Positions 1,408-53,864 of a stretch of 64,000 nucleotides of DNA are shown here, piece by piece; within the stretch, counting starts at the first letter, position 1; each line of letters opens with the position of its first letter. A program made the translations under genes and the position numbers. The notes beneath the pieces were generated by a model that saw nothing but the letters and a program-made list of their open reading frames with translations, was not told the DNA's origin and did not search any database. The DNA lies in IMG/VR virus record IMGVR_UViG_3300027782_000025, positions 186,001-250,000 of that record. The stretch is one strand, 5' to 3'.

Positions 1408-4400
1408 ATGGCAAAATTTACACCTCGTTTCCCTAGAAACGCTACTGACGGTCAAGAAGTTGCAGATAAGTATGGAAATGTTTGGAGATATTATTCTTCC
1501 ACTGACACCTGGGTATCAATCGGTTATCTTCAGCCTCCAATTATTGTCGATGAAAAGAATGATGGCTTTGTCTCCCCCGAAATTTATAAAAGAATACAAT
1601 ATTATAAAAACTTTAAAGAAGCTCTTAATCAAGCGCCCTTAAAGATATTGCCAGGTAGGGGAGCATACTATTATTACTTTAGATCTAATAATCGACTGAT
1701 TAAATTTAAGGCTGAATCTAAAAGCCAACTGCGTATAGAAGTCAATATGCAGCGGCTTTATCGTTTATTATATAATGAGAGATGCAAAGGCCCGACCGGT
1801 CAACGTGGACTAATTGGTGCGGCTGGAGTCGATGGTCTAGCAGCCCCCGCTGAACTCTCATTTAATCCAACATTTGACAATAATATAATGTCTTTTGCGG
1901 TCTACACCCCTCAGCCTTTAGAGGCTGGTGGAAAGATTTTTCTTCCGAATGGCCACGTACCAGATATAAGTGTTAGATTGGATGAGCTTGACCCCTCCTT
2001 CACTCCCTCTCTCCTCCCATCCTATGTCGAATTACCAATTTATCTGTTTACAATAAGCAATGAATACAAAGAATACATGAGGCTTCAAGCCGATATAAGA
2101 AATAAATGTGCGGCTGGTAACGGATTGTTCTATTTCTGTTTAAATGACGTTATTAAAAATCTTGACTTAGATTCGATAAATGCCCAAAGTGTGTTAGAAA
2201 TCAAGATTGACCCGACCGGCGCTGTTCCAGTTCGTTTTACAGGCGAGCTTTCTGCACTAATCGATGAGGGAGCATCAGCAGCGCTTATCGGTTATGATAA
2301 GGATTATCATATAGCCTATGGAAAAATAATCCTTAAGGTAGGTTCTTGGAACACTAATTATGCTGTAAAATCTAGACAATGTGGTCCAGACGGGGCTAGG
2401 GGTGACATTGGTTCTTCTAAATTAAGTATAAGCGAAGTGGTTATCGAGCCTGGTAGTACGGTCTTAGCTAAGAGGCCACTTATTGGTCTAAGATATGATA
2501 AAAGCTCATCTACTTTATTATCGTCATTTGGTGATCTTAGTATAGAGACGAATGTTGATAATATTTCTTTGGTTCCAGGATCTACAAATTTAGCTTTTGA
2601 AAGCCCAATTGATAGTGTTCTAGCGAGCGTTGAAACTACTGCTAATAGATATAAATCTCTAAGAATTCATGAGACCAGTATCGTTGGTTCTGAGACTCCT
2701 AAGACTAATTTTTTTGTCTGGCAGCCTCTACCAAACTGTGTTAGTAAGCATAATTATGAGAAGAATGTCTTTGATTGGGTGCCTTTAACTAGCAAGGAAC
2801 CTTGTGAAATTGGTGGTGTTACTTGGTATGGTGCTGATGGCCCTAAGAATGCTCAGTATCCATGGCAGATTTTAATACCTGCTTCTCCTGAGGTTGAAAA
2901 TTGCTGCCAGGAGCCTTTCTTCTATTGCCCTAATGTGCAGATGGGTGCTTGCAGCGATGTGGGTGGCGGTTCTGGGACTCCGGCCCCATCTACGCCCACT
3001 GCTTCACCAACACCAACAGCTTCACCGACGCCTACAGCTTCGCCCACTCCAACACCTACCCCAACACCAACACCTACCCCAACACCTACCCCAACACCTA
3101 CCCCAGCTGGGTCAGGTAGAGCCTTGTTTGGTTTTGGTATTACTACAGGAAATGTTTATGTCAGTTTAACCAACCATGTTTCGAATACCGGTGTTGTCGC
3201 ATCTGATACTACTGGTGTCGGTACCGCTAGAATGGGTCTGGCTGCTGCGGGTTATGGTGGTGATAAAGCTTTATTCGGATTTGGGATTTATAATGACCCT
3301 CTTGATGTTGTGGTCAGTACGACAAATCTTGTGTCGAATACTGGCGTGGTTGCGACCGACACAAATGGCGTTGGTACTCCAAGAATAGATCCGGCCGCTG
3401 CTGGTTATGGTACAGATAAGGCCATATTTGCATTCGGGAATACTGGAATTACTTTTACTTTTACCAGTTTAACTAATCTTGTATCTAATACTGGTGTTGT
3501 TGCGACCGATACGGCTAATGCTTCTAGTACTCCAAGAACTTCTGGCGCGGCAGCTGGTTATGGTGGTGATAAAGCTATTTTCGGATATGGGCTTTCGAAC
3601 ACAAATCCCTATGCATATATTAGTTTTACAAATCTTGTTTCTAACACCGGTGTTATGGCGTCTAATACCGCTGGCGTTGGTACTGCTAGGGCATATTTGG
3701 CGGCAGCAGGCTTCGGTGGTGATAAGGCCATATTTGGATATGGATCCACAAATAGCTCCACTTATGCTGAGACGAATATTGTTAATAATCTTGGTATAGT
3801 TTCAACTAATACTGTAATTGCTGGTTCTGTAAAGACGGAATCTTCCGCTACCATCTATGGTGGCAATAAAGCCGTATTTGGATATGGGTCCGGAAATGCT
3901 AGTAAGACTTATCTAAATCTCGCAAATTATGTTTCAAGCTTTGGCGTTGTTTCGGCGGATACAGCTATTGTTGGTACTGCTAGAAATAATTTAGCAGCGA
4001 CTAATTATGGTGGTAACCCAGCACCGACACCGACACCATGCTTAGACCTATTAGAAAAAGTCGGGCAATCACCATCAAACGTCGTATACCCACAAGACAA
4101 TGTCGTCTCACCAGACGGACGGACATTATATGTTTTAGGTGGTGGCCTTGGTAATACCCCCACCAAAGTGGCTATATTTTCAATAGACAAAAGCACTGGA
4201 CTTATAACCTTTGTAGAAGAAACAGCCGCTGGATACTCGCCTTATGGAATATGTGTTTCACCTGATTCAAAATATGTTTATATTTCTTCTATAACTGGTC
4301 CGCTCACAGATCCTACTTCAGTCTATGTGATCACAATGTATTCAAGAAATGCAGCCACAGGCAGTATAACATCGATAGGAACTGTTGGTCCAGTGGTTAC

Positions 4401-7400
4401 TAACGGTCAAATGGGTAAATTAATATTTTCTCCAAATGGGCTATTTGTCTATACTGCGACCTACAATACTATAATTTCTATTTATACTAGGAACGCTTCA
4501 ACAGGTGTTCTTGCCCCGCTTGGTTATGTCGTCGTAACCATACCTACATCTAACACTTTTTATATTCGTGGATTGTATATCTCGCCGGATGGCTTAAACT
4601 TATATGTTTCTCAAGATGAGACTTTTAATGCTGGCCGGCAGGTCATAGGTACTTCAATATCTAATTTTAGCATAAGCCAATCGACTGGACTGCTAACCTA
4701 TGTCGATAGAATAATAGGCAATGAAGTATTTTATAACGAAGGTATTGTTTCGCCGGACGGAAAAACCGTTTACACTTTAGGCACCAAAAATCCTTCCAAT
4801 ACCCTTGGAGCTGATGCTGTTACTATTTTTTCGAGATCTACTTCTACAGGTAGTCTTACACTCAGCGGTTCTATTGCTACAGCCGCAGTACCTACCGATA
4901 TTATAATATCTCCGGATGGTTCAAACGTCTATGTTAGCAGCGCAATTATAGTAGCTATAGGCTCCCTAGGCGCCCTTACGACATATCGTAGAAACATATC
5001 CACCGGAAGCTTGACATATTTAGGAGAAATACCTACTGGCGTCACGCCACGAGGTTTATCGATTTCGCCAGATGGTTCATATATCTATCAGGGAAATGCC
5101 TTAGATCCTTCTGTTTTTATATTTTTTAGGTGCGTCTCACTATCGCCGACACCGACTCCTACTCCGACACCCTCATATGTTACCGCTGGTCGAGCCGTAT
5201 TTGGATTTGGCGTTAGTGGCAGCCTTGCAACTTCGAGCGTTACTAATCTAGTTTCAAATACTGGTGTTGTCGCGACCGATTCTGCCGGTATTGGAACGGC
5301 CAGACATTATTTGGCTGCAGCTGGCTACGGCACAGATAAAGCTATATTTGGTTATGGGATTACATTTGGCGGCAGCATAAATACAAATTTAACGAATCTT
5401 GTTAGTAATATTGGAGTTATCGCGTCTGATACATCTGGCTTGGGAACCGCTAGAATGGGCTTAGCAGCAGCCGGCTATGGCACTGATAAAGCCATATTTG
5501 GCTATGGCTATACTACAGGTTATGTCGCTATTACTAACCTTGTTAATAACACTGGTCTCGTAGCGTCTGACACTGCCGGGGTCGGCTCGGTTAGGAATTT
5601 TTTAGCTGCTGCCGGTTATGGTGGTGATAAAGCAATTTTTGGCTTTGGGCAAAACAATACCTCAATATATTCGATGACTAACCTTGTTAGTAACACTGGA
5701 GTAGTCGCGTCAGACACAAATGGTGTTGGTAGCGGACGATCAGGCTCTTCAGCAGCCGGATATGGTAAAGATAAGGCGATTTTTGGCTTTGGTTTCTTTC
5801 AGAATGTTTATATCTCCTCGACTAATCTTATCAGTAGTATCGGTGTTGTTGCATCAGATACTTCCGGCATTGGTACCGCCAGAATGCTTAATGCAGCTGC
5901 CGGATATGGTGGTGATAAAGCGATTTTTGGATATGGAAGAACTAGTTCTACTGCAGCAGTAAGCATAACGAATCTTGTTAGTAGCACCGGCGTTGTCGCC
6001 ACTGATACAACTGGCATCGGCACTGAAAGATACGGGCTTGCCGCTGCTAGTGTTGGTGGTAATTCGTTGACACCTACACCTACACCTACACCAACACCAA
6101 CACCAACACCAACACCAACACCAACACCAATCAATCCATGCATAGTAACGAACTGGTCCGCTGTGCCGACGAAAGTCACGGGCGGCAGCTCTTACTATAT
6201 AACTTACGGTCAAGGTCGTTTCATAAATCTAATCACCACCGAATCAATTGAGATAGCAGATGGTGGAACTGTTTCTGTCCCCAGCTACTTGCAGACATCA
6301 ATCGATGGTACTAATTGGACAGATACTAAATTACCAAAAAATTATGTTTTTAATGGCTTTAATGCTTATCCTTACTTTTATTCTAAAATAGCAGTTAGCG
6401 ACAAAAGAATAATCTTTTGGGCAAACAATGATGTTTATACTCCTAACTACGATATTATTTATACAGATGATTTTGGCAGCACGTTTAATTCATATAAATT
6501 CGACGGAAAATATGGTTTCGAGTTTCCTCTGAGTATAGCTTACGGAAACAATAAATTCCTTCTAGTAACACAAGACATATACACCGCGATTGGAAGGAGT
6601 GTTAACTTTTATTTTTCTGATGATGGCTTAACTTTTGGCTCTGCCACTTATAGATTTTCTTTGCCCGGCCCTGATTGGAATGTAACGTTTACTAACGGCT
6701 TATTTTTTACATTTCCAGCAGGAACTATGACCGGCAGCCAAGTTTCGACAAAGGGGTATATGTCCGATGGCGGTCCCAATGCTTTTATCCCTTTTGATTT
6801 ACCTGTCGGAGCAGGCAATATTCGTAATCTAGTTTATGGTGCCGGAAGATATGTCTTGACTTCTGAAAAAGGCGTCTACTCTAGCCAAGGACCAAATCTT
6901 GGTCCTTGGGTTAAAGCTACATTGCCAACTACTATTACAACTGGTTATAGCGATAGCGCTTTCATTACTTTTGGATCTGGTACTTTCGTAATTATGCCTT
7001 TTAGAAAAAGCGTTCCTGATACACTTCAATATGCGCTTACTTCTCAAGATGGTATTAATTGGATCGTTACCGGTAGTCTTTTTACGTATCCTACTTCTCC
7101 TAACGCTCAACCAAGGGCCAACAATATAGCGTTTGGTTATACCTCACAAGATAAATCATCTTCTAAATTCATTATTAGTGCTATAACGACTACTCAAGGC
7201 ACGCTCGGCGCGCCATTAAATTATGGTAATGTTCTTGTCGCTCAATGTGTTACTACTCCAACACCTACACCAACTCCGACTGCTACGGCTTGTTCCTTTT
7301 TAACTTGGCCGCCATTTTTTGCTAATAGTAGTGCTGCTATGACTATTACTAGTATAAATACTGGTGCGGTTATGCAAGCTACCTTAGGAAATACTATAGT

Positions 7401-10400
7401 TGTAAAAGGTAATTTAAGTTATACACCACCACAAAACGACTACAGGGAATTTTACCAATACACTAGTAGTAGTGGCGCAATTATAATTGCTTCTCCATTT
7501 TCTGCCGGAGATAAAGTATTAATTAACGAAAATTCTGCATCACAAGGTACTAATGGTTACTATTTTATCTCTAAGATTATTAACGGTATCCACACGATCG
7601 TTTGTTCTCTTACACCAACACCTACTCCAACACCGACTCCGACACCAACTCCGACCACAGTTACTACTGCTTCAAACATTTGCGGATATCTCTGGGAAAG
7701 ATCAGATATCCCATCTGACAGGATAATTGTCGATGCTGCGACCTTCGGCCTTAATTATTACGCCATCACACACAATGATATCCTTGGTAATAGTTTACCA
7801 CTAGATGTAGGTTATAAGAGTAATTCCGGAAAGACATGGACTACGTTTACATTACCCTCGTTGTCAACAGGATACTGGAATAAGATAGCTTTTTTAGCTG
7901 GCGCAAGTACACCAGTGTTTGTGATCTACAGCACACCAGGCGTCGTCCGGCTATCGACCGACGATGGTAAAACTTGGGCCAAACCGTTTGACGCGGCTCA
8001 GGTAGGTATTGATCTGATTATCGTTTCTATTAGTTATAATACTTCTGCCAGCGTGCTAGTTGCTATTCATTCAGACGGCAAAGTGTATAAACATGGGATT
8101 CACTCTACAGATCCAACCCTGCTCACATTTACACTAATAAATCTACCTACGATCCCGAATAATGTCTGGCTAACAGTTAGTTTTAGTGATAAATTTTATC
8201 TGATTGGCAAGAACGCAGACGGCTCTTCATATGATACTTATTTAACATCAATAGATGGTGTTACTTGGGTCGTAGAGAAATTCCCACGTTCTGATAAATG
8301 GACAGGCATTGAGGGTCATAGCAATACGATTGTCGCTATTACGCTGGCCAATGGCGCGGCGGTTAAGACTGGTACACCATCGGCATGGCAGAATATTGTT
8401 TTACCAAATAATGTTTCTTCCTTTAGCTTTATTAGAAGTTCATCAACCGCCTCGTCTTTTTATCTTGGCGCTGCGTTTCTAGCAGCGGTAAAAGTCCCGA
8501 GTGGTGTAAACAATTCTGATATAGCCCATTCTACAGATGGTATAAATTGGTCGACCTCGACATTAACTTTTAATACTGCAGCCCCAGGCCTTAGCTTTAT
8601 AAATTTCTTTAAAGAAAACAACACCTTTTTAGTTATTTATAACGGCGGCGCCGATGGCGCTAAGGCTGCCGTATCATACTGTAACGAAATATCTTGTTTA
8701 ACATCTTGGACAGCGAGCAGAGCGCCAGACTTTACCAGCCCGCTTGGCGGTTTGCCGAATTACTCCGACTTGCTCTTTACATATGGTTCTAATTTTATGT
8801 TGCTTAATGCAACCACTTCTGACCTTAAGATATCTGATGATGGTATAACTTGGGCGTCTTTTAATGTCTATGGTGCTTCGACACCTGGGACCTCAGTTTG
8901 GAAAGATATTGCTGTTGGCCCGAATACGACATACTTGATACTTTCAGAGGAAAAAACAGTCGCTAAGTCTGTAGATGGTGGAAGAATTTGGCAAATATAC
9001 TCGACTTTACCGACACTCCCTAGTTCAGCAAGCAAAAACTGGCTTCAAGCATGCTACGGCGCTGGAAAATATGTGGCGTTAAGTTATTCTAACATAGGTG
9101 CATATTCTGTCGACAATGGTGCAACTTGGTCACAGATGACGTTGCCTGTATTCGCTGCATGGTCTGAATTGATTTACGCTAATGGCCAATTTGTGGCTAT
9201 AGCATCAAAAGAATTATCTAGTGGTGCTTTGGTAAATGCTGGATACGCGATGGTCTCTACTGATGGTATTAACTGGAGCATATTTAATCTGCCAGTTAAG
9301 ACAGATCCTTGGGTGGATATTGTTTATGGAAGCGATGTCTTTGTGGCTATACCTAGCGCACTAGATGCGAACTACGTCGCGGTTTCTTCTGATGCCAAAA
9401 AATGGACAAAGATATCGCTTCCAACACCAAGAATAACGCCATCCGTAAAATGGGTGCGGATATCATATGGGGCTGGCATCTTTCTTTTAACTTCTTCAGA
9501 TACTATACAGGCAGTATCTGCTGATGGGTTTAGCTGGTTTATTCGCAGTGCTGGTACTCTGTCCCCAATTAGTGATGCCATCGTAGCCTTTGGTAATAAT
9601 CGTTTTGTGGCGTTTTCATCGATACCTGAACGTGGTAATCCTGCTAACATTGCTATATCAATTTGCGATGCTACACCGCCCCCTTTCAGTAACCCTGACA
9701 TTAGCTGTTTTAAACAATGGCCAAGCAATGCTACTTCCGGCGATGCCTCTTATGTCAATACAGTGGTAACTGGCATGACATCTGGCGCAACGCAAATTAA
9801 TACGATTGTTAGCGAGCCATGCGTTTTAGGATTATATTTCCTTGATCCTAATAAAACCCAACAAAAACCCGTTTGGTATTATGGTCGATTTGCCTTTTTT
9901 AATAATGGAAGTATAACAGGTGTTAGCTCTAAATTTACGACTGCTAATACCCTTGGCAATCAGATGACATATGTTTATATAGATGAATCGACTTTCTTGT
10001 TTCGCACTGGTCTGCCTGATCCTAAACTAAATGATTATTTTAATAACGAAGACTTAACCGTTTACAATTTTAATGGTACTAATTCTATTTACCCAGGTGC
10101 TAAAATCGGCATCTCGGATGGGACATATAAGTATGTTGGATTAAGAGACTTAGGCGGCTTTACCTATTATGAAGCGACCTGTAAACCAAAGAATGTAATT
10201 GTCTATACTGTTTACTTAACTTATAAACATTCATTCTATGGTGGCCTATCCAATGGCCGTAACTTTATATTAAATGAAACTGTTAATATTGTAGGTGGTG
10301 TATCGAATTCCGCTGATTATGTAGTAACAGCCATAACACCTAGAAAAGGCTCGCCTGTCAATCCGCTCTGGGAAGGTGTAGAAGTGACTCTGGCGTGTCC

Positions 10401-13400: not shown

Positions 13401-14664
13401 GCAAGGTGAGATTTACTATGTCGGCAAAAACAGTATGGAAGCCTACTTGGGCGTTAGTCTAAAATGGACATCTGACACTGCTTTCGAAAGAATAGATAAT
13501 AATGGCGTTGCCTATTTATATAAGCCAACATTAATAGCCAGTAGTCCAACATATAAACAGATTTATGCGTGTGATTCTGCACTGATCATTGTTGATGTTT
13601 CCGGCGGATTACATGTTATCGGTGAGAACAAATGTGGAGTGCTGGGGATAAACCAAAAGGAAGGTTATACCACTAACAAAGTAATCCCAATGTTAAATCC
13701 TATCCCAGTACAAACTTTAGGGTCAGGTGCTGGGCCTGGTGTGGAGGGAATAGGCTTAGGCGTTGGTGTCGGGTTTGGCGTCCGCACGTCAAGAACAAAT
13801 GCTATGGCTATCACACGCGACGGCGATTTATTGTTTTGGGGCGGTTTTGTCGGACAAAGCGGATTGCCTACAAACATATACAAGCCTACTAAATTGACTT
13901 TGCCAGAATCTGGCGTGATTGATTATCAGCCAAATACTTCTGGATGCCTAGTAGTATTTAAGAGCGGCAATGTGTACGCTTATGGTTATAGTATTATCGA
14001 TAATAACAATGCTCCTGATACATTCTCTTCAGATTTTGTCCAAGTTGGATTTGGGTCGATTAATGGTGCTTTGGTCCTAGCCCATGGCTCCCCAGAACGA
14101 AACGGATATGTCTTAGTAAAGGATTTTGTAAAACCGCAATTGCCGGTTGGCTTGGGCCTGTGTATGACTATATTCGATAAAATCGCAAATGCCGATACAA
14201 TAACTGACGCTAATGGTATTCAATTCTATATTGGCGACACTATAGAAGTAAAACTAGACGTCACAACTAACCCCTACAATGGCAAGTATACGATCACCAA
14301 CATTGAAAAATTTACGGTTGGTACTAAGATAACCAAACAGATGAGATTAACTTGCTTATCTGGTAATTGTTTGGCTGGCGGGTTCCCTGGGGTGCTAACG
14401 GTTCCGGCTGTGCTTCCAGATCTAAGAAGCCTAACATCTACCAGCGGCGCTTCAATTATTCCAGCTCCGGCCGGAACATCGCCTGTATACACTATTACTT
14501 TCAATCCTAGCTGCGGAACTAGCCCGACACCAACACCGACAACACCAACGCCGACACCGGCTACACCAACGCCGACACCGGCTACACCAACGCCGACACC
14601 GGCTACACCAACGCCAACGCCGACTACGTCTAAATTAAAAGTACTATACACAGCGTGGAAATAA
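1408..14664 (+). CDS. Giant modular virion fibre/adhesin protein (4418 aa)
   Basis: N-terminal FPRNATDGQ...W.Y...W motif and short Gly-X-Y stretches. Two clusters of six [10 protein letters not shown](F/Y)G Kelch-like repeats, two lactonase-like propellers (SPDG/SEDG repeats), Asp-box (S.DG..W) domains and RCC1-like segments, separated by Pro-Thr linkers. Confidence 0.75.
2977..3105 (+). repeat. Pro/Thr linker tandem repeat
   Basis: Degenerate ACNCCN hexamer array encoding [10 protein letters not shown]...(PT)n. Confidence 0.9.
6070..6129 (+). repeat. Pro/Thr linker tandem repeat
   Basis: ACACCT/ACACCA hexamer array encoding (TP)10. Confidence 0.9.
12364..12519 (+). repeat. (CCAACA)n microsatellite encoding a (TP)n linker
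   Basis: 17 perfect CCAACA copies at 12415-12516 within a longer degenerate array. Confidence 0.95.
14521..14625 (+). repeat. 21-bp tandem repeat encoding (TPTPTPA)n
   Basis: ACACCAACGCCGACACCGGCT repeated three times near the 3' end of the 4418-aa gene. Confidence 0.85.
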
Positions 14665-14676
14665 AAAAGGAAAACC

Positions 14677-17600
14677 ATGAGGCTTACTGATAATATAAAA
14701 GCTAAAATAGAGGAACTCTATAATCTTACACCAGAAGATATTCACGGTGTTAGCCTAGGATATAAGCATAAAAGCGGCGCTAACACTGGCGAGATAGGCA
14801 TAGTATTTAGCGTTCTTAAAAAACTAAGTAGAAGTGAGTTAAAACCATCAGATATCTTGCCATCTACTATTACTGTAGACGGCGTTGATATTATTACTGA
14901 TGTTATAGAGGCTAAGCCAATTAAGTTAGTCTCTTGCTATCCTAACATGAGCTCTACTCCGCTGACTTCTTATATTGGCACCGATACAAATATCACACGA
15001 TTGCAAGGGCATGATACAGCCCTTCTAACACCGATGAAAGGTGGTCAAGAATTAGTACAATTTCCTACTAATTGGACAGCTGTTAATAACAACGGCCAAA
15101 CGAGCTATAATTTCGATGTGGGCACATTATGCATGTTTTGTATCGATAGTTTAGATTTTAGGGTGGTTGGTCTTACGAATAGTCACGTTGCAATTGACAG
15201 AAGAAATATAGCCACAGACAGAGATATAGTATTAGAAACGCAAGATCCTTATAACATTTACGAAGACATGACGTGGGTTTATGATGGAAAGAAGCATCCG
15301 CCCAGTATGGCTGCCTTTAATACTTTTAATAACCTTAATCTGGTCGGTAGATTAAAGAGGTACATCCCTGTGACTTCAGGCATAAATTATGTAGACGCAG
15401 CTCTCTACATTCCTAACGATTCTTATATTGATGTGGCTTCATCTTATAACACCTGGCACCCTATTGGCAGCGATAATTACGCATTTAAACCAATACCTCC
15501 TTTCGCTTCAACCAGCGAGATTGACAGTCTATTGGCAAATGCTAGCACCACACCAATATACAGCACCGGCCGTACAACCGGGCCAAAAGGGTTTAGTCAG
15601 ACTGCATCATGTAAGCTCATAATTACGGGCATTGGTGCTACGGTTACGGTCAACAATAATGCAAATTCAGCTAATAGCTGGGGTGACCTCATAGTATTTA
15701 AAAATGCTGATTCATCTTATTGGCCTATAGCTGGTGGAGATTCTGGATCTCCAATGATAGCTGTTATCGGCGGTGTCGAAAAAATAATAGGAATAGCTTT
15801 TGCTGGTAGTCCAGACACGGCATACGCTTGCAGAATCGATAGAGTTGCGCAAGAGCTGAAGATCGAATCGTATAAAAGCTTTCACACGACTACCGTTGCA
15901 GTACCTGATACTTTTACTATAGACTACACCGATCCGAGAGCCAAGCAAGCGACCATAACAGTGAATGGTGCGGTATATTATCAAGCTGGCTTTACTTTGG
16001 TTCAAGTTGCTACACCAACACCGACAGCTACTCCGACAGCTACTCCGACAGCTACTCCGACAGCTACTCCGACAGCTACTCCGACAGCTACTCCGACAGC
16101 TACACCCACAGCTACACCCACAGCAACACCGACAGCTACACCGACAGCTACACCCACAGCTACACCCACAGCAACACCGACACCCACAAATTGTTTTTTA
16201 TCTTGGCCTCAAGCTACCTCTTATTCATTTGATTATATGACTATTACTAGTATTAATTCTGGTATGGTTTTAAAACCAATCTTTGGAACTTCTAATATAG
16301 TAATAAACAGCAATAGAGAATTTTATCAAAAGGACTTTACTAGCGGTAAGCCGGTGACTTGCACCCCATTTTCTGTCGGAGATAAAGTTCTAATAGCTCA
16401 GAACTCTACACCGATGCGGGGCTATGATGGCTATTATTATATTTCTAAGATCACAAGCGGTATCCACTCTCTTGTATGCACTCTTGCAGAAGTGTCAACA
16501 CTGTGCGTAGGCGAATTGACAGGCCCCTGTGAAACGGAAAGAAACGGCACTGTTTATTACTTAGCTGTATCTCCCGATGGCTTAAATGTATATGCAACAA
16601 TATTTCAAAATCCAACGATATTAGTTTATAACAGGTCTAAGACTACAGGCGCATTAACATTAAACAGTACCATAACTATGGTTGCTGCGCTCCCAGCAGA
16701 TATAATCGTATCTCCAGATGGTTTATATGTATATGTCACTAACGGTAGTAACGGCCTTACAAAAAGCGGACCATATATATCAATTTATAGGAGAGACAAA
16801 GCTACGGGTGCACTGACAAGCGCTGGTACCCAATACACAGGCATAGATTGGGATTTTACTCTTGGCATTGCCATTTCTCCAGATAATTTAAATGCATATA
16901 CTACAAATTATGGGTCTGGTACAGTATCGATTTATAATAGAAACATAATCACAGGAGCGTTGACAAGTGCCGGCACCATAGATGCAGCAGTTAAGCTCGC
17001 TGTTGGTATATCAGGCAGTCAACCACACGATGTGATCGTTTCTCCTGATAATTTGAATGTATATGTGACTAATACCATGCCGCCAACAAATGGTTGTGTA
17101 TTATCGATCTATAAAAGAAACACAACTACTGGCGCACTAACAAGTGCTGGCACTGTACCAACTGGTAGTAACGCTAAGCGCATGTGTATTTCTCCCGACG
17201 GTAAAAACGTATATGTGCTTCATGACGGCAGTCCCGGCAAATTAACTATTTTTAATAGAAACACGACCACGGGGGCGTTAACAAATGCCGGCGACATAGA
17301 TACAGGAAATTGGCCTTGGGGTGTTAATATCTCTCCAGACGGCTTAAATGTGTATGTGACAAAAAACGGTCCGAACGAAATGTTCATCTATAGTAGAAAT
17401 AAGGTCACAGGCACCTTGATTAAAACAGGCACCAGCCTTATAAGTCTGTTTAATGCGCCTACTGATGTGGTGGTTTCACCAGATGGCTTAAATGTATACT
17501 CAGGGCTATTCAGTGGGTCTTTTTCTAGCGCGATTCCCGGGGGCTATGGCGGATCAGTTTCAGTCTTTAATAGATGTTTACCAACGCCTACACCAACGCC

Positions 17601-20511
17601 TACACCTACACCTACATCCACGCCGACGCCAAGCATTATTCAATCATTCCCTTCTGATGGTGGTGAATATAAAGTTAAATATGCAGAAGAGAATTATGGC
17701 AAAGCACTAGCCGTCAGTGGTGATGGTAAGATCCTATTGGTTAGTGCTCCGATCGCCTCAACAGTATTTCAGAATACGACCATGACTAAGTGCGGAGCGG
17801 TTTATATTTATGAACGAAATGCTAACAATGTGTGGGTAGGTTTACAAAAAATATTCTCACCCAATCCAACAGCAAATGCAAGTTTTGGTGAAGGTTTAGC
17901 ATTATCACATAATGGCCAAAGAATATTCGTCGGCCAACCAAACGCTAACTCTGGCGCCATTATGGTTTACAATAGAGTCGGCAATGAATACATCTACGAT
18001 AGTGATTTGCCGATCACATCAGACATGCTATTACATTCGACATTTAATGCCGAGGTGGTTAATTGGGGATATCGTTTGAGCTGCACTCCTGACGGTCTAA
18101 CCGTAGCTGCTATTTCTCCAAACACAATAGCTCCTGGCGAATACACTAAGCAATTAGATAATTGGCCAACCGGATTTTACAATGGCTCGAATCCTACGGT
18201 ATTCACTGTCAGTATCTATCAGCCATCCAGTGGTGCTGAATGGCGCTCGACAAAGAATGATTATGGGATATCTTATATCAGAAGAAGCGGCGGCGGCATT
18301 GAGGTGACAGCAAATCAAAGCAAAGTATCGATAAAAGGGTATTTCAGACAAAATGAACCTGTCTATATTCAGGACATATCTGATATTCACCCTGAATATA
18401 CTGGGTTCTACACTACGACCCAGCCAGCGGTTACTAGCGGCATCTATTATACCATGAACATTTACCCATTAGGAAGCAACGGAATAAGAACAACTACAGA
18501 TCCTATGAGCTCATACGCTGGCAATGTTGCTGTGTTTAATTATCAGAATGCAGGGTCTAGTATGTCTTGGGTAAGACAAGGTTACATGTTGGCAGATTTT
18601 GCCGGATATTCTGAGGCCTCGTTATCATTTAGCGACGACGGTTTAAGATTATTAGCAAGTGTTAAGCGCTATGGAATGCTGATTTCATATGTATTCAAAA
18701 GCCCTTCACTATTATCGAGCTATGCGTTAACCAACATTTTGGCTCTAATCGACCCTTATCCTATCGATAACGCCGGTATCTTTGGTATCAGTGGTGATGG
18801 TAAAATGGCAATGCTAGACTATGCTTTATATTATCTTGACTCGTTGCCTATCCCAGATTATATTACAGCGACACCAAGTGCGGTACTAAAAAACATCACT
18901 TATAATGGCGTCGAGGATTTTGCTAGAAACGCGAACTATTTAGCCAAAGGCGCACCGCAGAAGTACCAGATCATATCAGATCAAAGCAGCAACGGTGCTA
19001 AGAAAAATACTACATTCAGTTATGCATTAGGTTATGGTGGTGAACCTGTTCCAGATGAATCATACATATCGCCAAGCTCAGCGCTCGACTATTCTGCAAT
19101 GTTTATCGGTGATGATAAAGCTGTTAGTAAGAATGGTGATGTGCTGGTAAGATCTTATAAAGATGGTGGCGTGAGATCTATATTATTCCATCAAAGCGAT
19201 AAACAAATTATTACAGCGCCGGCAGGCATGGTGTGGTTTGGTAACCAAGTCGAAATGAATCCAGATGGTACCTTCTTTACTTGTGTTTACGGAAAGCGTT
19301 CTGACACCGATAAGAGTATTAGCTATGGTAAATGTACCTATGTCAGAATGGGCCAACGTTTCTATAATCAGCTCGAAAATAGAATCATATATAATAACTT
19401 CCCAGCCGCAGTTTATCCTTTAACAAATCTCGCATTGCCGACCACATATGTTACGGACTCTAAGTGCATCCAGCAGATAACCAATGTTTATGGAACTGAC
19501 GCTAATTTATTAGGCATTTTTAGAGATTTAGACGAAGGTGTGTCGAAACGAACAACGACATCATGGAATAAGAATTGGCTTACAAATAATGCAGACAGGA
19601 GTCTTTTGTTTACTTCTAATACCACAGGAACGAACGGGCCAGTCACTGGAAAGAATAGTGTCGCTATTAGCGAAGATGGCGTTTCTTTTGTGGTTGGTTC
19701 GTTGTTTTCTAATAACGGCACTGGAGCCATTGAGCTTTATACTAGAGATGTGGCGCAAGATGGTACTTTTTACTCTGCTTGGTCAGCTGGTACATCGGTC
19801 TTTAAGGGTGCTGACTTCTTGTCTGTAACAGTTGATAAGGCTAATTTAAAATACCCATTATTTGGTTATTCTGTAACTATCCTAGGAACTGTTGGAAACA
19901 GATGGATCGCTGTTGGGGCTCCTAAAGCTTATGATGGCAAGGGCGTGGTGTGGATATGGAGAGTCGATGAGCGAGACCAAACGACACCCGACACTTATAT
20001 TTTAATGGGTGAGAATGCCAATGAAGGCTTCGGGACTGCTGTCAAGATTTACATAAACCCTGACACGACATATATGACTCTAGCTGTAGGTACTGATACT
20101 GGATTGGTAAAAATGTATGCTAAGACTGGGCCTAGCACTACTCCATTCGAACCAACCGGCATTATAGTGGCTCCAGACGGCAAAGATTCTGGCTTTGGTA
20201 AAGATATTAAAACGACCAGAGACGGACTCCAAAACATCATCATCACTGCGCCTTTAGCATCATATCAAGGCACTAAGCTTCAAGCTGGTGTAATATATGT
20301 TTATTCATCAGACGGAACGACATTGTTAAAAACATATAGGTCAGAATCACCACAAGCCAACGACCAAACAGGCTTTAGAGCTAGCGACCGATTTTATACT
20401 AACACTGGGGCAGTAGGATATGGTTTCAGGACTATCACTGCTATAGGTTCACCTGGTCGTAATAATGGCAATGGGCAAATCGAAATTACTTTTGAGAACC
20501 CTTATCCTTAA
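14677..20511 (+). CDS. Modular fibre protein with N-terminal trypsin-like (NAL1-type) serine protease, lactonase-like propeller and FG-GAP repeats (1944 aa)
   Basis: GVSLGYK...TDVIE prodomain-like N-terminus. Catalytic triad motifs TNSH(170)V, VD(240)AAL, GGDS(356)GSP. (TPTA)n linker, SPDG repeats, and FG.AL.VS...VSAP...GAVY.Y repeats. Confidence 0.75.
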   Translation: MRLTDNIKAKIEELYNLTPEDIHGVSLGYKHKSGANTGEIGIVFSVLKKLSRSELKPSDILPSTITVDGVDIITDVIEAKPIKLVSCYPNMSSTPLTSYIGTDTNITRLQGHDTALLTPMKGGQELVQFPTNWTAVNNNGQTSYNFDVGTLCMFCIDSLDFRVVGLTNSHVAIDRRNIATDRDIVLETQDPYNIYEDMTWVYDGKKHPPSMAAFNTFNNLNLVGRLKRYIPVTSGINYVDAALYIPNDSYIDVASSYNTWHPIGSDNYAFKPIPPFASTSEIDSLLANASTTPIYSTGRTTGPKGFSQTASCKLIITGIGATVTVNNNANSANSWGDLIVFKNADSSYWPIAGGDSGSPMIAVIGGVEKIIGIAFAGSPDTAYACRIDRVAQELKIESYKSFHTTTVAVPDTFTIDYTDPRAKQATITVNGAVYYQAGFTLVQVATPTPTATPTATPTATPTATPTATPTATPTATPTATPTATPTATPTATPTATPTATPTPTNCFLSWPQATSYSFDYMTITSINSGMVLKPIFGTSNIVINSNREFYQKDFTSGKPVTCTPFSVGDKVLIAQNSTPMRGYDGYYYISKITSGIHSLVCTLAEVSTLCVGELTGPCETERNGTVYYLAVSPDGLNVYATIFQNPTILVYNRSKTTGALTLNSTITMVAALPADIIVSPDGLYVYVTNGSNGLTKSGPYISIYRRDKATGALTSAGTQYTGIDWDFTLGIAISPDNLNAYTTNYGSGTVSIYNRNIITGALTSAGTIDAAVKLAVGISGSQPHDVIVSPDNLNVYVTNTMPPTNGCVLSIYKRNTTTGALTSAGTVPTGSNAKRMCISPDGKNVYVLHDGSPGKLTIFNRNTTTGALTNAGDIDTGNWPWGVNISPDGLNVYVTKNGPNEMFIYSRNKVTGTLIKTGTSLISLFNAPTDVVVSPDGLNVYSGLFSGSFSSAIPGGYGGSVSVFNRCLPTPTPTPTPTPTSTPTPSIIQSFPSDGGEYKVKYAEENYGKALAVSGDGKILLVSAPIASTVFQNTTMTKCGAVYIYERNANNVWVGLQKIFSPNPTANASFGEGLALSHNGQRIFVGQPNANSGAIMVYNRVGNEYIYDSDLPITSDMLLHSTFNAEVVNWGYRLSCTPDGLTVAAISPNTIAPGEYTKQLDNWPTGFYNGSNPTVFTVSIYQPSSGAEWRSTKNDYGISYIRRSGGGIEVTANQSKVSIKGYFRQNEPVYIQDISDIHPEYTGFYTTTQPAVTSGIYYTMNIYPLGSNGIRTTTDPMSSYAGNVAVFNYQNAGSSMSWVRQGYMLADFAGYSEASLSFSDDGLRLLASVKRYGMLISYVFKSPSLLSSYALTNILALIDPYPIDNAGIFGISGDGKMAMLDYALYYLDSLPIPDYITATPSAVLKNITYNGVEDFARNANYLAKGAPQKYQIISDQSSNGAKKNTTFSYALGYGGEPVPDESYISPSSALDYSAMFIGDDKAVSKNGDVLVRSYKDGGVRSILFHQSDKQIITAPAGMVWFGNQVEMNPDGTFFTCVYGKRSDTDKSISYGKCTYVRMGQRFYNQLENRIIYNNFPAAVYPLTNLALPTTYVTDSKCIQQITNVYGTDANLLGIFRDLDEGVSKRTTTSWNKNWLTNNADRSLLFTSNTTGTNGPVTGKNSVAISEDGVSFVVGSLFSNNGTGAIELYTRDVAQDGTFYSAWSAGTSVFKGADFLSVTVDKANLKYPLFGYSVTILGTVGNRWIAVGAPKAYDGKGVVWIWRVDERDQTTPDTYILMGENANEGFGTAVKIYINPDTTYMTLAVGTDTGLVKMYAKTGPSTTPFEPTGIIVAPDGKDSGFGKDIKTTRDGLQNIIITAPLASYQGTKLQAGVIYVYSSDGTTLLKTYRSESPQANDQTGFRASDRFYTNTGAVGYGFRTITAIGSPGRNNGNGQIEITFENPYP
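16009..16188 (+). repeat. 12-bp tandem repeat encoding (TPTA)n
   Basis: Perfect GCTACTCCGACA copies followed by GCTACACCCACA variants. Confidence 0.9.
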
Positions 20512-28624: not shown

Positions 28625-28686
28625 TACTATGGCTGTTTGGCACAACACAAGCTTAGATCTTTTTATGTATATTGAGATATAAAATT

Positions 28687-46067: not shown

Positions 46068-46674
46068 CCAGCCTAACGCTACAGCACCGATGCCAAAACC
46101 GCCAGCGGTTCTAAGGTATCCGGAAATGCTTGGCGAAGACTACTTACCAGCCATTAAAGATACTTTGGCTTACGTTATAAAGCCATATGCTTTAGAAGGC
46201 TTATCGGTTATAATATCAAAAGACGAAAAATCTGACAATATTATGATATTATTTGCCGATTGGTTTGGAAATAAATTAGACTTATTAGAAAAAACGAATA
46301 AATTAGTGATAATGGCAGACGCATTCTTAGCTAACAATGTGCAAATTCTAATAAATTTCATGAAAATGATAAAAGTAAAACAAGCACAATACTTTTTCTC
46401 AGGTACAACTTATGAAGAAATGATACTGGTCGATATGCAGACCTCTATAAATAAAATGTGCGGACCAGGGATGATTAGAGATTTATTCAGCAAGATAATG
46501 AAGACGCAAGAAGTTTTAAAAGTAGAACCGATCGATGAGAGGGCTATAAGCGCTATAAACACCGGCAATGGTATCTATGAAGGAGATATCATTTTAAAAC
46601 CTTCTAGATTTAGACAATACCATAATCTAGAAAAGGGGCTTTATACTCCGTTATATGTGAAAATAACCAGATGA
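45997..46674 (+). CDS. Hypothetical protein
   Basis: 225-aa ORF coupled (ATGA) to the downstream glycosyltransferase; start uncertain. Confidence 0.55.
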   Translation: MRRKGSTPSNKEIIPQVRPSGISNQPNATAPMPKPPAVLRYPEMLGEDYLPAIKDTLAYVIKPYALEGLSVIISKDEKSDNIMILFADWFGNKLDLLEKTNKLVIMADAFLANNVQILINFMKMIKVKQAQYFFSGTTYEEMILVDMQTSINKMCGPGMIRDLFSKIMKTQEVLKVEPIDERAISAINTGNGIYEGDIILKPSRFRQYHNLEKGLYTPLYVKITR

Positions 46675-48635: not shown

Positions 48636-49585
48636 GAATTCTAATGGTACGCCGAGTTAGCGGGGCATTTGGGTATATCACAGATGGTATGGTCAATGCT
48701 TTGCGATCTAAGGGGCATGAAGTTAAGCGATTCGATGGCGAAATGAGCACTTGGAACGAGTTCGATCCTGATATCTATATTGGATGTTCAGGCCACAGAG
48801 AAAGTATTCCCATCGAAGGGCGAAGAGCTAAAGTTGCTATACATGTTAACCCTTATGGCCCTGTTTCGATACCTGGCGGAATTAATGAAAGCCAAGACAG
48901 CGTTGATTGGGTTAAAAAGCAAAAACCAGATGTGGTCTTTGGTTATGGTTTCGATGAAGATGCTATACTTTGGAGCTATTGGCATCAAAGGGCTAACACA
49001 CGTTGGATACCAATGCCCACCGCAGCAGATGCTACTATATTCTCAGATTTAGGCCAAGATAGAAGAAACCAAATCATTTACCTCGGTGGAAGATGGACAT
49101 ATAAAGCAAAGACTATCGATTCGTACCTTCTACCAGTGTTAAATTCTTTTAGGGGAAAGTGGAAGTTATATGGCTGGGGCGAATGGCCAGAAGGAATGTC
49201 ATCGGGTGAACTGCCGCAACATGAAGCAAATGAGTTTTATAACACCGGAAAAGTAGCTCCATGTATTTCAGAAATTCATACTCATACACATAATATAGAT
49301 ATACCAGAACGAGTTTTTAAAGCTTGCTTGGCTGGTTGCTTGCCGATCCACGACACCGTTCCGGTATTATCAAGAGTTATACCAGGCCTCCCAGTCGCAA
49401 AAGATCCAAATGACTTTCTTGCACTGCACGCGCATTATCTTGCTCCTATAACAGAAAAAGAACTTAAAGAAAAAAGCGCAAGATTAAGAGATTGTGTGGC
49501 TAAAAACCACACATACCACCAAAGAATGCACAGACTATTGCACGGATTGGGTTTTCCAGCAGAGGCAAATGATATAATAATATAA
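48632..49585 (+). CDS. CgeB/Glyco_trans_1_2-like glycosyltransferase
   Basis: IIYLGG, ERVFKA, HTYHQR motifs. Confidence 0.65.
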   Translation: MRILMVRRVSGAFGYITDGMVNALRSKGHEVKRFDGEMSTWNEFDPDIYIGCSGHRESIPIEGRRAKVAIHVNPYGPVSIPGGINESQDSVDWVKKQKPDVVFGYGFDEDAILWSYWHQRANTRWIPMPTAADATIFSDLGQDRRNQIIYLGGRWTYKAKTIDSYLLPVLNSFRGKWKLYGWGEWPEGMSSGELPQHEANEFYNTGKVAPCISEIHTHTHNIDIPERVFKACLAGCLPIHDTVPVLSRVIPGLPVAKDPNDFLALHAHYLAPITEKELKEKSARLRDCVAKNHTYHQRMHRLLHGLGFPAEANDIII

Positions 49586-49586
49586 T

Positions 49587-52787: not shown

Positions 52788-53864
<1,077 letters not shown>

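What the first reader, a model, noticed from the sequence alone, without database searches (positions are those of the whole stretch)
1408..20511. Cys-bracketed cassette grammar in giant PT-linked fibre proteins
Seen: most domains between Pro/Thr linkers start and end with a Cys at the linker boundary. 4418-aa examples: PTPTP-C(4039)LDLL...FFR-C(5131)VSLSPTP; NP-C(6139)IVTNW...AQ-C(7246)VTTPTP; TA-C(7291)SFLTW...TIV-C(7603)SLTPTP; KNA-C...[10 protein letters not shown]. The same occurs in the 1944-aa protein (TN-C...LV-C; TL-C...FNR-C-LPTP) and the 1768-aa protein (VQ-C...RKN-C-TPP; PT-C...II-C-RPTP; LE-C...VY-C-PPTP). The two Kelch-like clusters are exceptions with no Cys. Inference: each cassette is a disulfide-closed unit whose termini meet, so propellers can be added or swapped like beads on a mucin-like stalk. 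I know of no description of this grammar in phage fibres.
Basis: partly seen in the sequence, partly recalled or inferred. Interest (0 to 1): 0.8.

Follow-up and report, generated by a model that had tools for sequence, protein, structure and literature searches.

The report
Cysteine-bracketed cassettes in giant phage fibre-like proteins
An uncultured freshwater jumbo phage encodes giant bead-on-a-string proteins in which nearly every globular domain between proline/threonine linkers starts and ends with a conserved cysteine, and related phages carry different sets and orders of these domains, which suggests disulfide-closed, swappable adhesion modules.

Summary
In the three giant ORFs (4418, 1944 and 1768 aa), 20 of 36 Pro/Thr-linker boundaries have a Cys within 6 residues, against 2.8 expected. 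About 20 cassettes of at least 8 different sequence types begin and end with a Cys.

The bracket Cys are conserved 36/37 across orthologous cassettes at 65% mean identity. They are invariant in three propeller paralogues at 17-28% identity. They are absent from 119 of 120 database homologues of the lactonase-type propeller, so they are a lineage-specific addition.

In the lactonase cassettes the chain starts at strand D and stops after strand C of the closing blade. The two Cys sit where the C-D turn would be, so a ring-closing disulfide is geometrically expected. I could not show it, because no coordinates were available.

Two relatives keep the N- and C-terminal modules (80-92% identity) but differ in which inner cassettes they carry and in what order.

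"Fibre" is supported by context for the 1768-aa protein, whose N-module is homologous to a neighbouring tail-spike-like protein next to Mtd_N tail fibres. For the other two proteins it is only plausible.

Analogous terminal-disulfide modules are known outside phages (hemopexin, CBM2, vWF A domains). I rate this a new variant of a known kind.

The parts
1408..14664 (+). Protein A, 4418 aa. Order: N-domain, R1, Lac1, R2, P1, s, P2, P3, X1, X2, X3, Lac2, Y, RCC, s2, tail, then a PT linker and the end peptide [10 protein letters not shown].
1408..2970 (+). A N-terminal domain (aa 1-521). It has two short collagen-like G-X-Y runs (aa 128-146 and 326-337) and a Cys-rich end (C499, 500, 507, 515). 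It is 92% identical in relatives and is not bracketed.
   Evidence: weak atlas lead to collagen-type phage tail fibres
3115..4014 (+). R1: six ~47-aa repeats with no Cys. A phage-typical PLL/Kelch-like beta-propeller.
   Evidence: atlas score 0.97 to viral propeller clusters
4039..5133 (+). Lac1: lactonase-type 7-blade propeller, C878...C1242, flanked on both sides by Cys-free R propellers.
   Evidence: Pfam PF10282; blade register
5185..6060 (+). R2: second Cys-free repeat propeller.
6139..7248 (+). P1: BNR/sortilin-like beta-propeller with exactly two Cys, the first and last residues (C1578, C1947).
   Evidence: alignment A2; AF2 pLDDT 72.7, pTM 0.78; PDB hits to sortilin, Kelch and PLL propellers
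7291..7605 (+). s domain: ~105-aa beta-barrel, C1962...C2066, motif C-F-x-S-W ... G-V-H-T-I-V-C. Orphan family.
   Evidence: alignment A1; one true hit in 1.84 billion representatives; AF2 pLDDT 88.5; no confident fold match
7681..8682 (+). P2: sortilin/BNR-like propeller, C2092...C2425.
8695..9666 (+). P3: BNR-like propeller, C2430...C2753, joined to P2 by only four residues (C-NEIS-C).
9706..10398 (+). X1: 231-aa cassette, C2767...C2997, with conserved ends and a hypervariable core.
10474..10803 (+). X2: 110-aa Cys-rich cassette, C3023...C3132 (7 Cys).
10924..11295 (+). X3: 124-aa cassette, C3173...C3296.
11389..12351 (+). Lac2: lactonase-type propeller with one Cys per blade (GICIS motif) and a different end phase. 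It is not a simple bracket.
12529..12888 (+). Y: 120-aa cassette, C3708...C3827, lying between a 58-aa and a 10-aa PT linker.
12961..14523 (+). RCC1-like propeller (from C3852), then the s2 domain and tail. This is the conserved C-terminal module, 80-87% identical in relatives.
14524..14661 (+). Last PT linker followed by [10 protein letters not shown], which is identical in all three relatives.
14677..20511 (+). Protein B, 1944 aa. Order: protease-like N-domain (GDSGSP motif), (PTAT)n linker, s (C506...C601), Lac (C610...C967), PT linker, FG-GAP-type C-terminal half with no bracket.
56682..61988 (+). Protein E, 1768 aa. Order: fibre-type N-module, Lac1 (C163...C478), RCC1-like (...C855), s1 (C864...C982), s2 (C1003...C1143), Lac2 (C1157...C1486), C-terminal domain.
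56682..57137 (+). E N-module (aa 1-152). It is 39% identical (E=6e-28) to the N-terminus of the neighbouring 546-aa tail-spike-like protein.
61997..64000 (+). Protein F, which runs off the window (873 aa in full). RCC1-like propeller with no PT linkers. It is the first of the downstream fibre cluster.
46671..51121 (+). Glycosyltransferase genes (GT2+GT2, GT1-like, GT2), which could glycosylate the PT linkers. This role is an inference.
52788..53813 (-). GDP-mannose 4,6-dehydratase.

Best explanation
The three giant ORFs are modular, probably virion-displayed adhesin or fibre proteins of an uncultured freshwater jumbo phage. Each has a conserved N-terminal module and a conserved C-terminal module. 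Between them lies a variable string of globular binding cassettes: lactonase-, BNR/sortilin- and RCC1-type beta-propellers, an orphan ~105-aa beta-barrel, and several small beta domains. The cassettes are joined by Pro/Thr linkers.

Most cassettes carry one Cys at the very first and one at the very last residue. The most likely role is an intradomain disulfide that ties the two chain ends together. It would form once the protein is in oxic lake water, or through an oxidase not seen in this window. In the lactonase propellers the disulfide would replace the missing C-D hairpin turn of the closing blade and so make the ring covalently circular.

Three consequences follow by inference:
- Each cassette hangs as a closed pendant with entry and exit at one point, so it can be inserted, deleted or swapped at linkers without disturbing its neighbours.
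- Tension along the stalk passes through the S-S bond rather than through the fold.
- The exposed ends are protected from fraying and proteolysis.

The linkers may be O-glycosylated by the phage's own glycosyltransferases.

Shown: the pattern, its conservation, its lineage-specific origin, the cassette differences among relatives, and the fibre-gene context of protein E. Inferred: the disulfide itself, location on the virion, glycosylation, and ligand binding.
For: - Cys enrichment at linker boundaries: 20 of 36 observed against 2.8 expected.
- Exact end-to-end brackets occur in about 20 cassettes and in every orthologous cassette of the relatives.
- Bracket Cys are conserved 36/37 at 64.7% overall identity, including cassettes at 29-44% identity.
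- The first and last Cys are among only 24 invariant columns in the P1/P2/P3 alignment at 17-28% identity.
- TGT and TGC are used equally and there is no DNA motif around them, so selection acts on the protein.
- 120 database homologues of the lactonase propeller end at the same blade phase (...F/Y-x-R-N), but only 1 has Cys at both ends.
- Blade register: the cassettes start at strand D and stop after strand C. The joined closing blade aligns colinearly with the internal-blade profile, and the two Cys fall on the turn positions.
- Lac1 and P1 are flanked by Cys-free propellers. Their end Cys can therefore only pair within the cassette.
- Relatives share the N module (92%) and the C module (80-87%) but differ in inner cassettes. 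The A homologues are 4418, 3575 and 4361 aa; the B homologue has another cassette in place of Lac; fragment P0001 has the order Lac-PT-s-C2.
- Colinear DNA blocks begin and end at linkers.
- Fibre context: E_N is homologous to the neighbouring tail-spike-like protein. Mtd_N tail fibres lie directly downstream, and one of them carries FG-GAP_2 repeats like protein B.
- Glycosylation genes lie in the window.
- None of the three proteins has an N-terminal signal peptide by eye. This fits release by lysis rather than secretion.
Against: - No coordinates were available, so no SG-SG distance was measured.
- The P1 model is below pLDDT 50 at residues 1-12 and 349-370.
- Phage proteins fold in a reducing cytoplasm, and no thiol oxidase, DsbA or thioredoxin was found among the window ORFs scanned.
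- The R propellers close without any Cys, so a bracket is not needed for a propeller in this context.
- Some cassettes have odd Cys counts (Lac1 has 3, P3 has 3, X2 has 7).
- C4252 would have to serve both RCC and s2.
- Proteins A and B sit among replication genes and have no detectable similarity to known virion proteins.
- No virion proteomics exists for this uncultured phage.
Confidence: 0.55

Rival explanations
1. The boundary Cys form disulfides, but not within cassettes. They would link neighbouring cassettes by looping out the linker, or cross-link chains of a multimeric fibre, as in mucin-type polymerisation.
For: At linkerless junctions the two Cys are only 4-13 residues apart (C2425-x4-C2430, C855-x8-C864, C601-x8-C610). 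A_N has collagen-like triplets, which suggest a trimer.
Against: Lac1 (C878, C1242) and P1 (C1578) border Cys-free R propellers, so they have no partner across the linker. The blade register places the two ends of one cassette next to each other. Cassettes with exactly two Cys (P1, s, P2) are the simplest fit to intradomain pairing.
Confidence: 0.12
2. There are no disulfides. The end Cys are conserved free thiols or metal ligands, or serve a transient folding or assembly role, like the transient Cys chemistry of the P22 tailspike.
For: The proteins are made in the cytoplasm without a signal peptide. No oxidase was found in the window. The P22 tailspike precedent appears in the literature list (PMC3357383; title and abstract only).
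Against: Exactly one Cys sits at each extreme end in eight unrelated folds, which is hard to explain by metal sites. The Cys are absent from cellular homologues that fold well without them. The particles live in oxic lake water.
Confidence: 0.12
3. The proteins are not virion fibres. They would be lysis-released or cell-associated multi-domain enzymes or lectins, such as lactonases and a protease acting on host envelope or signals. The brackets would simply stabilise extracellular domains.
For: A and B lie between SbcD and polymerase genes. B starts with a trypsin-like GDSG domain. There are no PHROG structural hits for A or B.
Against: E shares its N-module with a tail-spike-like neighbour and heads a tail-fibre cluster. 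A, B and E share cassette families. The conserved-ends, variable-middle mosaic is typical of receptor-binding proteins.
Confidence: 0.2
4. The differences in cassette order among relatives are metagenome assembly artefacts at the repetitive linker DNA.
For: Logan contigs of four runs break exactly at linkers. Depth spikes there, and the joints found have short sides inside linker repeats.
Against: Linkers are codon-scrambled. The longest exact match between two linkers of this genome is 43 nt, and all others are 18 nt or less. All three assemblies keep one open frame over 10.7-13.3 kb. L002 and L003 come from different samples and share blocks. The Cys pattern does not depend on cassette order.
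Confidence: 0.1

Closest known systems
Hemopexin-like domain of matrix metalloproteinases (four-bladed propeller)
   Same: A beta-propeller whose ring is tethered by a single disulfide between the first and last blades (PMC3045013), attached to the rest of the protein by a flexible linker.
   Different: It has four blades and is of animal origin. There is no sequence relation. Here the propellers are 6-7-bladed lactonase, BNR or RCC1 types, the Cys are the literal first and last residues, and many cassettes are strung in one chain.
CBM2 modules and Pro/Thr linkers of Cellulomonas fimi-type cellulases (own knowledge; not verified in a paper here)
   Same: Secreted modular proteins with (PT)n linkers, often glycosylated, and a binding module with one Cys near each end forming a disulfide.
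   Different: These are bacterial secreted enzymes with one or two modules. There was no Pfam CBM_2 hit here. Here the rule is applied to at least 8 unrelated folds in a phage protein.
von Willebrand factor A1 and A3 domains (own knowledge)
   Same: A long-range disulfide joins the N- and C-termini of a domain within a giant, mucin-like, force-bearing multidomain protein. It shields the fold from tensile unfolding.
   Different: Different fold (Rossmann-like vWA) and eukaryotic secretory-pathway oxidation.
Mosaic phage tail fibres and receptor-binding proteins, including bead-on-string 'tentaclins' (PMC10743442)
   Same: A conserved anchoring module plus exchangeable distal binding domains. 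Flexible multi-domain strings are proposed as adhesins. The mosaicism between close relatives is similar.
   Different: Tentaclins are 313-830 aa and consist of a C-type lectin plus Ig-like domains. No PT linkers or Cys brackets are described for them. None of those domains was detected here.
Lactonase / YncE-type 7-bladed beta-propellers (PF10282)
   Same: Five cassettes are clear members (E values 2e-24 to 2.5e-45) with the same closing phase of three C-terminal strands plus one N-terminal strand.
   Different: 119 of 120 homologues lack the terminal Cys pair.

Membership tests
Lactonase-type 7-bladed beta-propeller (Pfam PF10282) | Score above the Pfam gathering cut-off (21.7 bits) | tested here: met
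   116.4, 86.7 and 155.6 bits for proteins A, B and E
Lactonase-type 7-bladed beta-propeller (Pfam PF10282) | Repeated blade motif, with the chain ending after strand C of the last blade | tested here: met
   Blade register. Homologues end at the same ...F/Y-x-R-N phase.
RCC1-like propeller (PF00415 / PF13540) | Repeat score above the gathering cut-off | tested here: met
   E: RCC1_2 at 31.5 bits against a cut-off of 22, and RCC1 at 25.0 against 21.7. A: below cut-off (19.1) for the repeat models, but E=1.7e-21 to WD40_RLD, itself below that model's 150-bit cut-off.
BNR / sortilin-Vps10 type propeller | Pfam score above cut-off | tested here: not met
   27.9 bits against a cut-off of 33 for P2; E values of 0.03-0.08 for P1 and P3
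BNR / sortilin-Vps10 type propeller | Beta-propeller fold resembling sortilin or sialidase | tested here: met
   P1 model pTM 0.78. Top PDB hits are sortilin Vps10p, Kelch, PLL lectin and sialidases, at probability 1.00 but TM 0.4-0.6.
Disulfide-closed propeller (hemopexin-type closure) | A Cys in the first and in the last blade, positioned to bridge the ring closure | tested here: met
   Sequence register only: the Cys fall on the C-D turn positions of the closing blade.
Disulfide-closed propeller (hemopexin-type closure) | The disulfide bond is actually formed | not testable with these tools
   The tools return no coordinates, and no biochemistry is possible.
Hemopexin family (sequence membership) | Four hemopexin repeats detectable by Pfam | tested here: not met
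   No hemopexin hit
CBM2 | Pfam CBM_2 match | tested here: not met
   No hit in any cassette
Phage tail fibre / receptor-binding protein | N-terminal module shared with recognised tail fibre or spike proteins | tested here: inconclusive
   E_N is 39% identical (E=6e-28) to a neighbour whose only label is phrog_4636 'tail spike' at E=1e-7. A_N and B_N have no such match.
Phage tail fibre / receptor-binding protein | Location in a tail or fibre gene cluster | tested here: met
   Met for E and F: they are followed by a tail-spike-like gene and three Mtd_N-type fibre genes. Not met for A and B, which lie between SbcD and polymerase genes.
Phage tail fibre / receptor-binding protein | Presence in the virion | not testable with these tools
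   The phage is uncultured and known only from metagenomes.
Mucin-like O-glycosylated PTS linkers | Long Pro/Thr/Ser-rich unstructured segments | tested here: met
   18 linkers of 7-58 residues
Mucin-like O-glycosylated PTS linkers | Glycans attached to Thr/Ser | not testable with these tools
   Context only: four glycosyltransferase domains or genes, a cytidylyltransferase and GDP-mannose dehydratase lie in the window.
Tentaclins | N-terminal C-type lectin domain plus Ig-like domains with a C-terminal anchor Ig | tested here: not met
   No C-lec or Ig Pfam hits. Family definition taken from PMC10743442.

The most novel reading that the evidence does not exclude
This phage lineage has evolved a general 'plug' convention: add one Cys to each end of any globular fold. 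At least 8 unrelated domain types would thereby become covalently circularised pendants on a glycosylated Pro/Thr stalk. That would allow rapid gain, loss and reordering of receptor-binding cassettes, and would give a force- and protease-resistant multi-lectin tentacle up to 4418 residues long. If so, it would be the first systematic use of structural disulfides in a tailed-phage virion protein. It would imply either post-lysis oxidative maturation or a phage-directed oxidation step.
Probability: 0.3. Interest if true: 0.8.

Novelty: new variant of a known kind. Interest (0 to 1): 0.62.

Why it matters
If the brackets are disulfides, this is a natural and repeatedly used design rule for making any domain insertion-competent and mechanically shielded, in a virus whose proteins are made in a reducing cytoplasm. 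It would explain how very long phage adhesins diversify by whole-cassette exchange. It would point to post-release oxidative maturation of phage particles in lakes. It would also offer a simple template for engineering modular binders. The orphan s barrel and several unassigned cassettes are new domain families tied to host recognition in uncultured freshwater jumbo phages.

Tried and rejected
- Megablast and tblastn against isolated phages found nothing for the window, Lac1, E_N+Lac1 or R2. RecA and DnaE have only distant hits, below 50% and below 30% identity.
- The word-indexed protein search with region 1578-2430 of protein A found nothing.
- The exhaustive profile search with the s domain gave one true relative, P0001, and four chance or repeat hits. 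P0001 lies on a 2.9-kb contig without useful context.
- PDB and BFVD fold searches of the s model gave only TM ~0.5 barrel resemblances, to PilZ and to a tail-sheath insertion.
- PDB sequence searches of A_N, B_N and F_N gave nothing useful, except a weak lipoyl-domain-like stretch in A_N.
- I looked for a recombination signal in the DNA around the Cys codons and found none.
- I considered the linkers as long homologous-recombination substrates and rejected that. They are codon-scrambled, sharing 18 nt or less except for one 43-nt pair.
- Laying metagenome contigs on 2900-8800 to find population variants was inconclusive. All joints sit in linker repeats with short sides.
- I looked for a thiol oxidase, thioredoxin or DsbA among the window ORFs that contain CxxC motifs and found none.
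- Literature searches found no description of Cys-bracketed, PT-linked cassettes in phage proteins.
Full report
**What the window is.** The window matches positions of about 186,001-250,000 of IMG/VR contig UViG_3300027782_000025, which is 274,625 bp long. Public runs that hold the sequence are freshwater and lake-water metagenomes.

The window encodes:
- an SbcD-like nuclease;
- a DnaE-type polymerase split into two ORFs;
- RecA/UvsX, a DnaB-type helicase, and gp32- and UvsY-like proteins;
- a Volactin-family actin-like protein;
- several glycosyltransferases, a cytidylyltransferase and GDP-mannose 4,6-dehydratase.

No isolated phage is close. Megablast found nothing, and RecA and DnaE are below 50% and below 30% identical to database phages. 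This is an uncultured freshwater jumbo phage.

**The observation.** There are three giant ORFs: A (1408-14664, 4418 aa), B (14677-20511, 1944 aa) and E (56682-61988, 1768 aa).

I defined Pro/Thr linkers by a regular expression, which gave 18 linkers of 7-58 residues. I then asked how many of the 36 linker boundaries have a Cys nearby. Within 3, 6 and 10 residues the counts are 12, 20 and 24. Random placement of the same number of Cys gives 1.4, 2.8 and 4.5. None of 20,000 permutations came near the observed values.

Segmenting the proteins at linkers shows that the first Cys is typically 0-6 residues from a segment's start and the last Cys 0-5 residues from its end. Where two cassettes abut without a PT linker, the rule still holds:
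- C2425-NEIS-C2430
- C2753-x13-C2767
- B C601-x8-C610
- E C855-x8-C864

So the Cys belong to the domain ends, not to the linkers.

The two ~47-aa-repeat clusters (aa 570-869 and 1260-1551) are indeed Cys-free. Other exceptions are the N-terminal domains, B's C-terminal 956 aa, E's C-terminal domain, and A's second lactonase propeller, which has one Cys per blade.

**What the cassettes are.**
- Pfam identifies five lactonase-type 7-bladed propellers (PF10282; 87-156 bits against a cut-off of 21.7), RCC1-like propellers in A and E, and weak sortilin/BNR signals.
- P1 (aa 1578-1947) folds as a beta-propeller: pLDDT 72.7, pTM 0.78, with top PDB hits to sortilin Vps10p, Kelch, PLL lectin and sialidases.
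- The Cys-free R clusters match, at feature score 0.97, viral clusters whose models are PLL/Kelch-like propellers.
- A recurrent ~105-aa domain, which I call s (C-F-x-S-W ... P-F-x-v-G-D ... Y-Y-I-s-x-I-x-x-G-V-H-T-I-V-C), occurs in A, B, E and the relatives.
  - Its model is confident: pLDDT 88.5, all-beta.
  - It has no convincing structural relative; the best matches are a PilZ barrel and a tail-sheath insertion at TM ~0.5.
  - A profile search of 1.84 billion representative proteins found one true relative. It is an orphan family.
- Cassettes X1, X2, X3, Y and Z have no family assignment.

**Are the bracket Cys under selection?** Four lines of evidence say yes.
1. Across 18 orthologous cassette pairs (window against two relatives), bracket Cys are conserved 36/37 at 64.7% overall identity. 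This includes cassettes at 29-44% identity.
2. In an alignment of the P1, P2 and P3 paralogues (17-28% identity to P1), the first and last residues are invariant Cys. Only 24 columns in that alignment are invariant.
3. TGT and TGC are used equally (17 and 16 times), and no nucleotide motif surrounds the codons. The constraint is therefore on the protein.
4. The word-indexed database search with E's first lactonase cassette returned more than 1,100 homologues. Of the best 120, most end at the same structural phase (...F/Y-x-R-N/S). Only one has a Cys in both end windows.

The bracket is therefore not inherited with the fold. It was added in this lineage to cassettes of unrelated folds.

**Do the ends meet?** I could not measure distances, because the prediction tool returns no coordinates. 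The P1 model is also unreliable at residues 1-12 and 349-370.

For the lactonase cassettes the sequence register gives a strong indirect argument. Internal blades read: strand A (I-x-I-S-x-D-G), strand B (N-V-Y-V), strand C (I-S-I-F-x-R), a turn (N-x-T-T-G), and strand D (L-T-x-x-G-x-I). The cassettes begin exactly at strand D ([27 protein letters not shown]). They stop exactly after strand C (ITMFSRKN-C, VFIFFR-C, IIVYDRVY-C).

I scored the C-terminal piece followed by the N-terminal piece against a profile of internal blades. For E_Lac1 and E_Lac2 the alignment is colinear, and the two Cys fall on the turn positions. This is the classical closure in which the N-terminal strand completes the last blade (established knowledge of propeller 'velcro' closure). 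The chain ends sit where a hairpin turn would be, so a disulfide there would make the ring covalently circular.

The pairing must be intradomain, at least for Lac1 and the N side of P1. Their neighbours across the linkers are Cys-free R propellers.

A Trp 3-6 residues after the N-terminal Cys recurs in P1-P3, s, X1 and X2. It may pack on the disulfide; this is an inference.

**Cassette order in relatives.** Two related contigs come from other samples.
- UViG_3300027733_000040 encodes an A homologue of 3575 aa (loci L002, L006, L012).
- UViG_3300042520_003271 encodes an A homologue of 4361 aa (loci L003, L011).

Both keep the N-domain at 92% identity, and the RCC, s2 and tail module at 80-87% identity. 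Both end in the identical peptide [10 protein letters not shown].

The inner orders differ. '|' marks a PT linker and '.' marks a direct junction:
- Window: N | R1 | Lac1 | R2 | P1 | s | P2.P3.X1 | X2 | X3.Lac2 | Y | RCC.s2
- L002: N | R | P2.P3.X1 | X2 | Y'.s | s | Z | R | RCC.s2
- L003: N | R | P1.s' | P2.P3.X1 | X2 | Z.R | R | s | X3 | s | RCC.s2

Every additional cassette in the relatives is also Cys-bracketed.

In protein B, the relative has a different 375-aa bracketed cassette in place of Lac. The fragment P0001 has the order Lac-PT-s-C2.

Colinear DNA blocks start and stop at linkers, at aa 1247, 1574, 2069 and 3838. The single R of the relatives aligns to the start of R1 and to R2. 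This suggests unequal exchange between paralogous cassettes.

The linkers themselves are codon-scrambled. The longest exact match between two different linkers is 43 nt, and all others are 18 nt or less. They are therefore at best microhomology sites. The same scrambling makes gross misassembly within one genome unlikely.

One caveat remains. Short-k contigs of four runs break at the linkers, and the read-laying experiment gave only unreliable joints inside linker repeats. Long reads are needed to confirm the orders.

**Are they fibres?**
- *Protein E.* Yes, by context.
  - Its first 146 residues are 39% identical (E=6e-28) to the N-terminus of a 546-aa neighbour that matches a tail-spike PHROG.
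  - E and the RCC1-bearing protein F are followed directly by that gene.
  - Next come three proteins with the Mtd_N-type tail-fibre N-terminus.
  - One of those fibres carries FG-GAP_2 repeats, the family also found in B's C-terminal half.
- *Protein A.* The only hints are two short collagen-like G-X-Y runs and weak feature-space leads to collagen-type phage fibres.
- *Protein B.* It begins with a trypsin-like domain (GDSGSP; weak 'protease' PHROG and NAL1_N hits).

A and B lie among replication genes. None of the three proteins has an obvious signal peptide.

**Mechanism proposed.** Conserved end modules anchor a variable string of lectin-like or binding cassettes. Each cassette would be closed by a first-to-last disulfide that forms once the protein is outside the reducing cytoplasm. 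This gives pendant modules whose entry and exit coincide, so whole cassettes can be gained, lost or moved at linkers. It also diverts tensile load from the fold and protects the chain ends.

The phage's glycosyltransferase set may glycosylate the Thr-rich linkers. That step is inference only.

**Comparison with known systems.**
- Terminal disulfides next to Pro/Thr linkers are known in CBM2 modules of actinobacterial cellulases (my own knowledge).
- N-to-C disulfides shield the vWF A1 and A3 domains from force (my own knowledge).
- Bead-on-string phage adhesins have been described as tentaclins (PMC10743442), but without PT linkers or Cys brackets.

I found no report of this rule in phage proteins.

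**Verdict.**
- The cassette-swapping prediction is met.
- Disulfide closure is the best-supported reading but remains unproven.
- The finding is a new variant of a known structural principle, in an unusual setting.

Noticed in passing
window 24107-25657 (+): A 516-aa ORF matches the Volactin family (PF25216, E=7e-38, 131 bits against a cut-off of 35). This is an actin-like protein encoded by a jumbo phage, just upstream of the polymerase.
   Followed up: no
window 26351-27751 and 29018-31741 (+), with ORFs at 27753-28184, 28178-28624 and 28672-29031 between them: The DnaE-type polymerase is split into two ORFs that match consecutive parts of phrog_405. Three small ORFs lie between them, and one has a C2H2/BED-type zinc finger. 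This may be a mobile insertion.
   Followed up: partly
window 33688-34404, 46671-51121 (+) and 52788-53813 (-): A sugar-modification gene set: cytidylyltransferase (CTP_transf_3), a double GT2 protein, a GT1-like protein, a GT2 protein and GDP-mannose 4,6-dehydratase. They lie between the giant Thr-rich genes and are candidates for linker glycosylation.
   Followed up: partly
window 14632-14661; L002 and L011 homologues: The last ten residues of protein A ([10 protein letters not shown]), after a 36-aa PT linker, are identical in all three relatives, although the linkers differ. This may be a docking or anchoring peptide.
   Followed up: no
window 9706-10398 (A aa 2767-2997): Cassette X1 has conserved ends, but its core (about aa 2795-2930) cannot be aligned at the DNA level between relatives. 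It is 42% identical at the protein level, against 70-75% in neighbouring cassettes. It is a candidate hypervariable binding surface. I did not look for a diversity-generating retroelement.
   Followed up: partly
window 14677-16008 (B aa 1-444): The N-terminal domain of protein B has a GDSGSP serine-protease-like motif and weak hits to a 'protease' PHROG and to NAL1_N. A protease fused to adhesin-type cassettes would be unusual.
   Followed up: partly
L008 10792-18556 (contig downstream of the window end): Directly after E come protein F (873 aa, RCC1-like), a 546-aa tail-spike-like protein, a 152-aa paralogue of the same N-module, and three Mtd_N-type tail fibres (191, 589 and 211 aa). This is a multi-fibre locus with shared N-terminal modules.
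   Followed up: partly
window 20524-22452 (+): A 642-aa ORF directly after protein B has 14 Cys, no PT linker and no family hit. A 460-aa ORF at 22461-23843 follows it, also without hits.
   Followed up: no
window 2395-2601 (A aa 330-398): A stretch of A's N-domain resembles the lipoyl domain of dihydrolipoyl acetyltransferase (PDB 7b9k, E=1.2e-5), suggesting a barrel-sandwich hybrid fold.
   Followed up: no
window 2971-3114, 6073-6132, 12352-12525, 16009-16191: Metagenome contigs from unrelated lake samples pile up on the linker-coding DNA at depths of hundreds. PT-linker-coding repeats are therefore very common in these lake communities.
   Followed up: no
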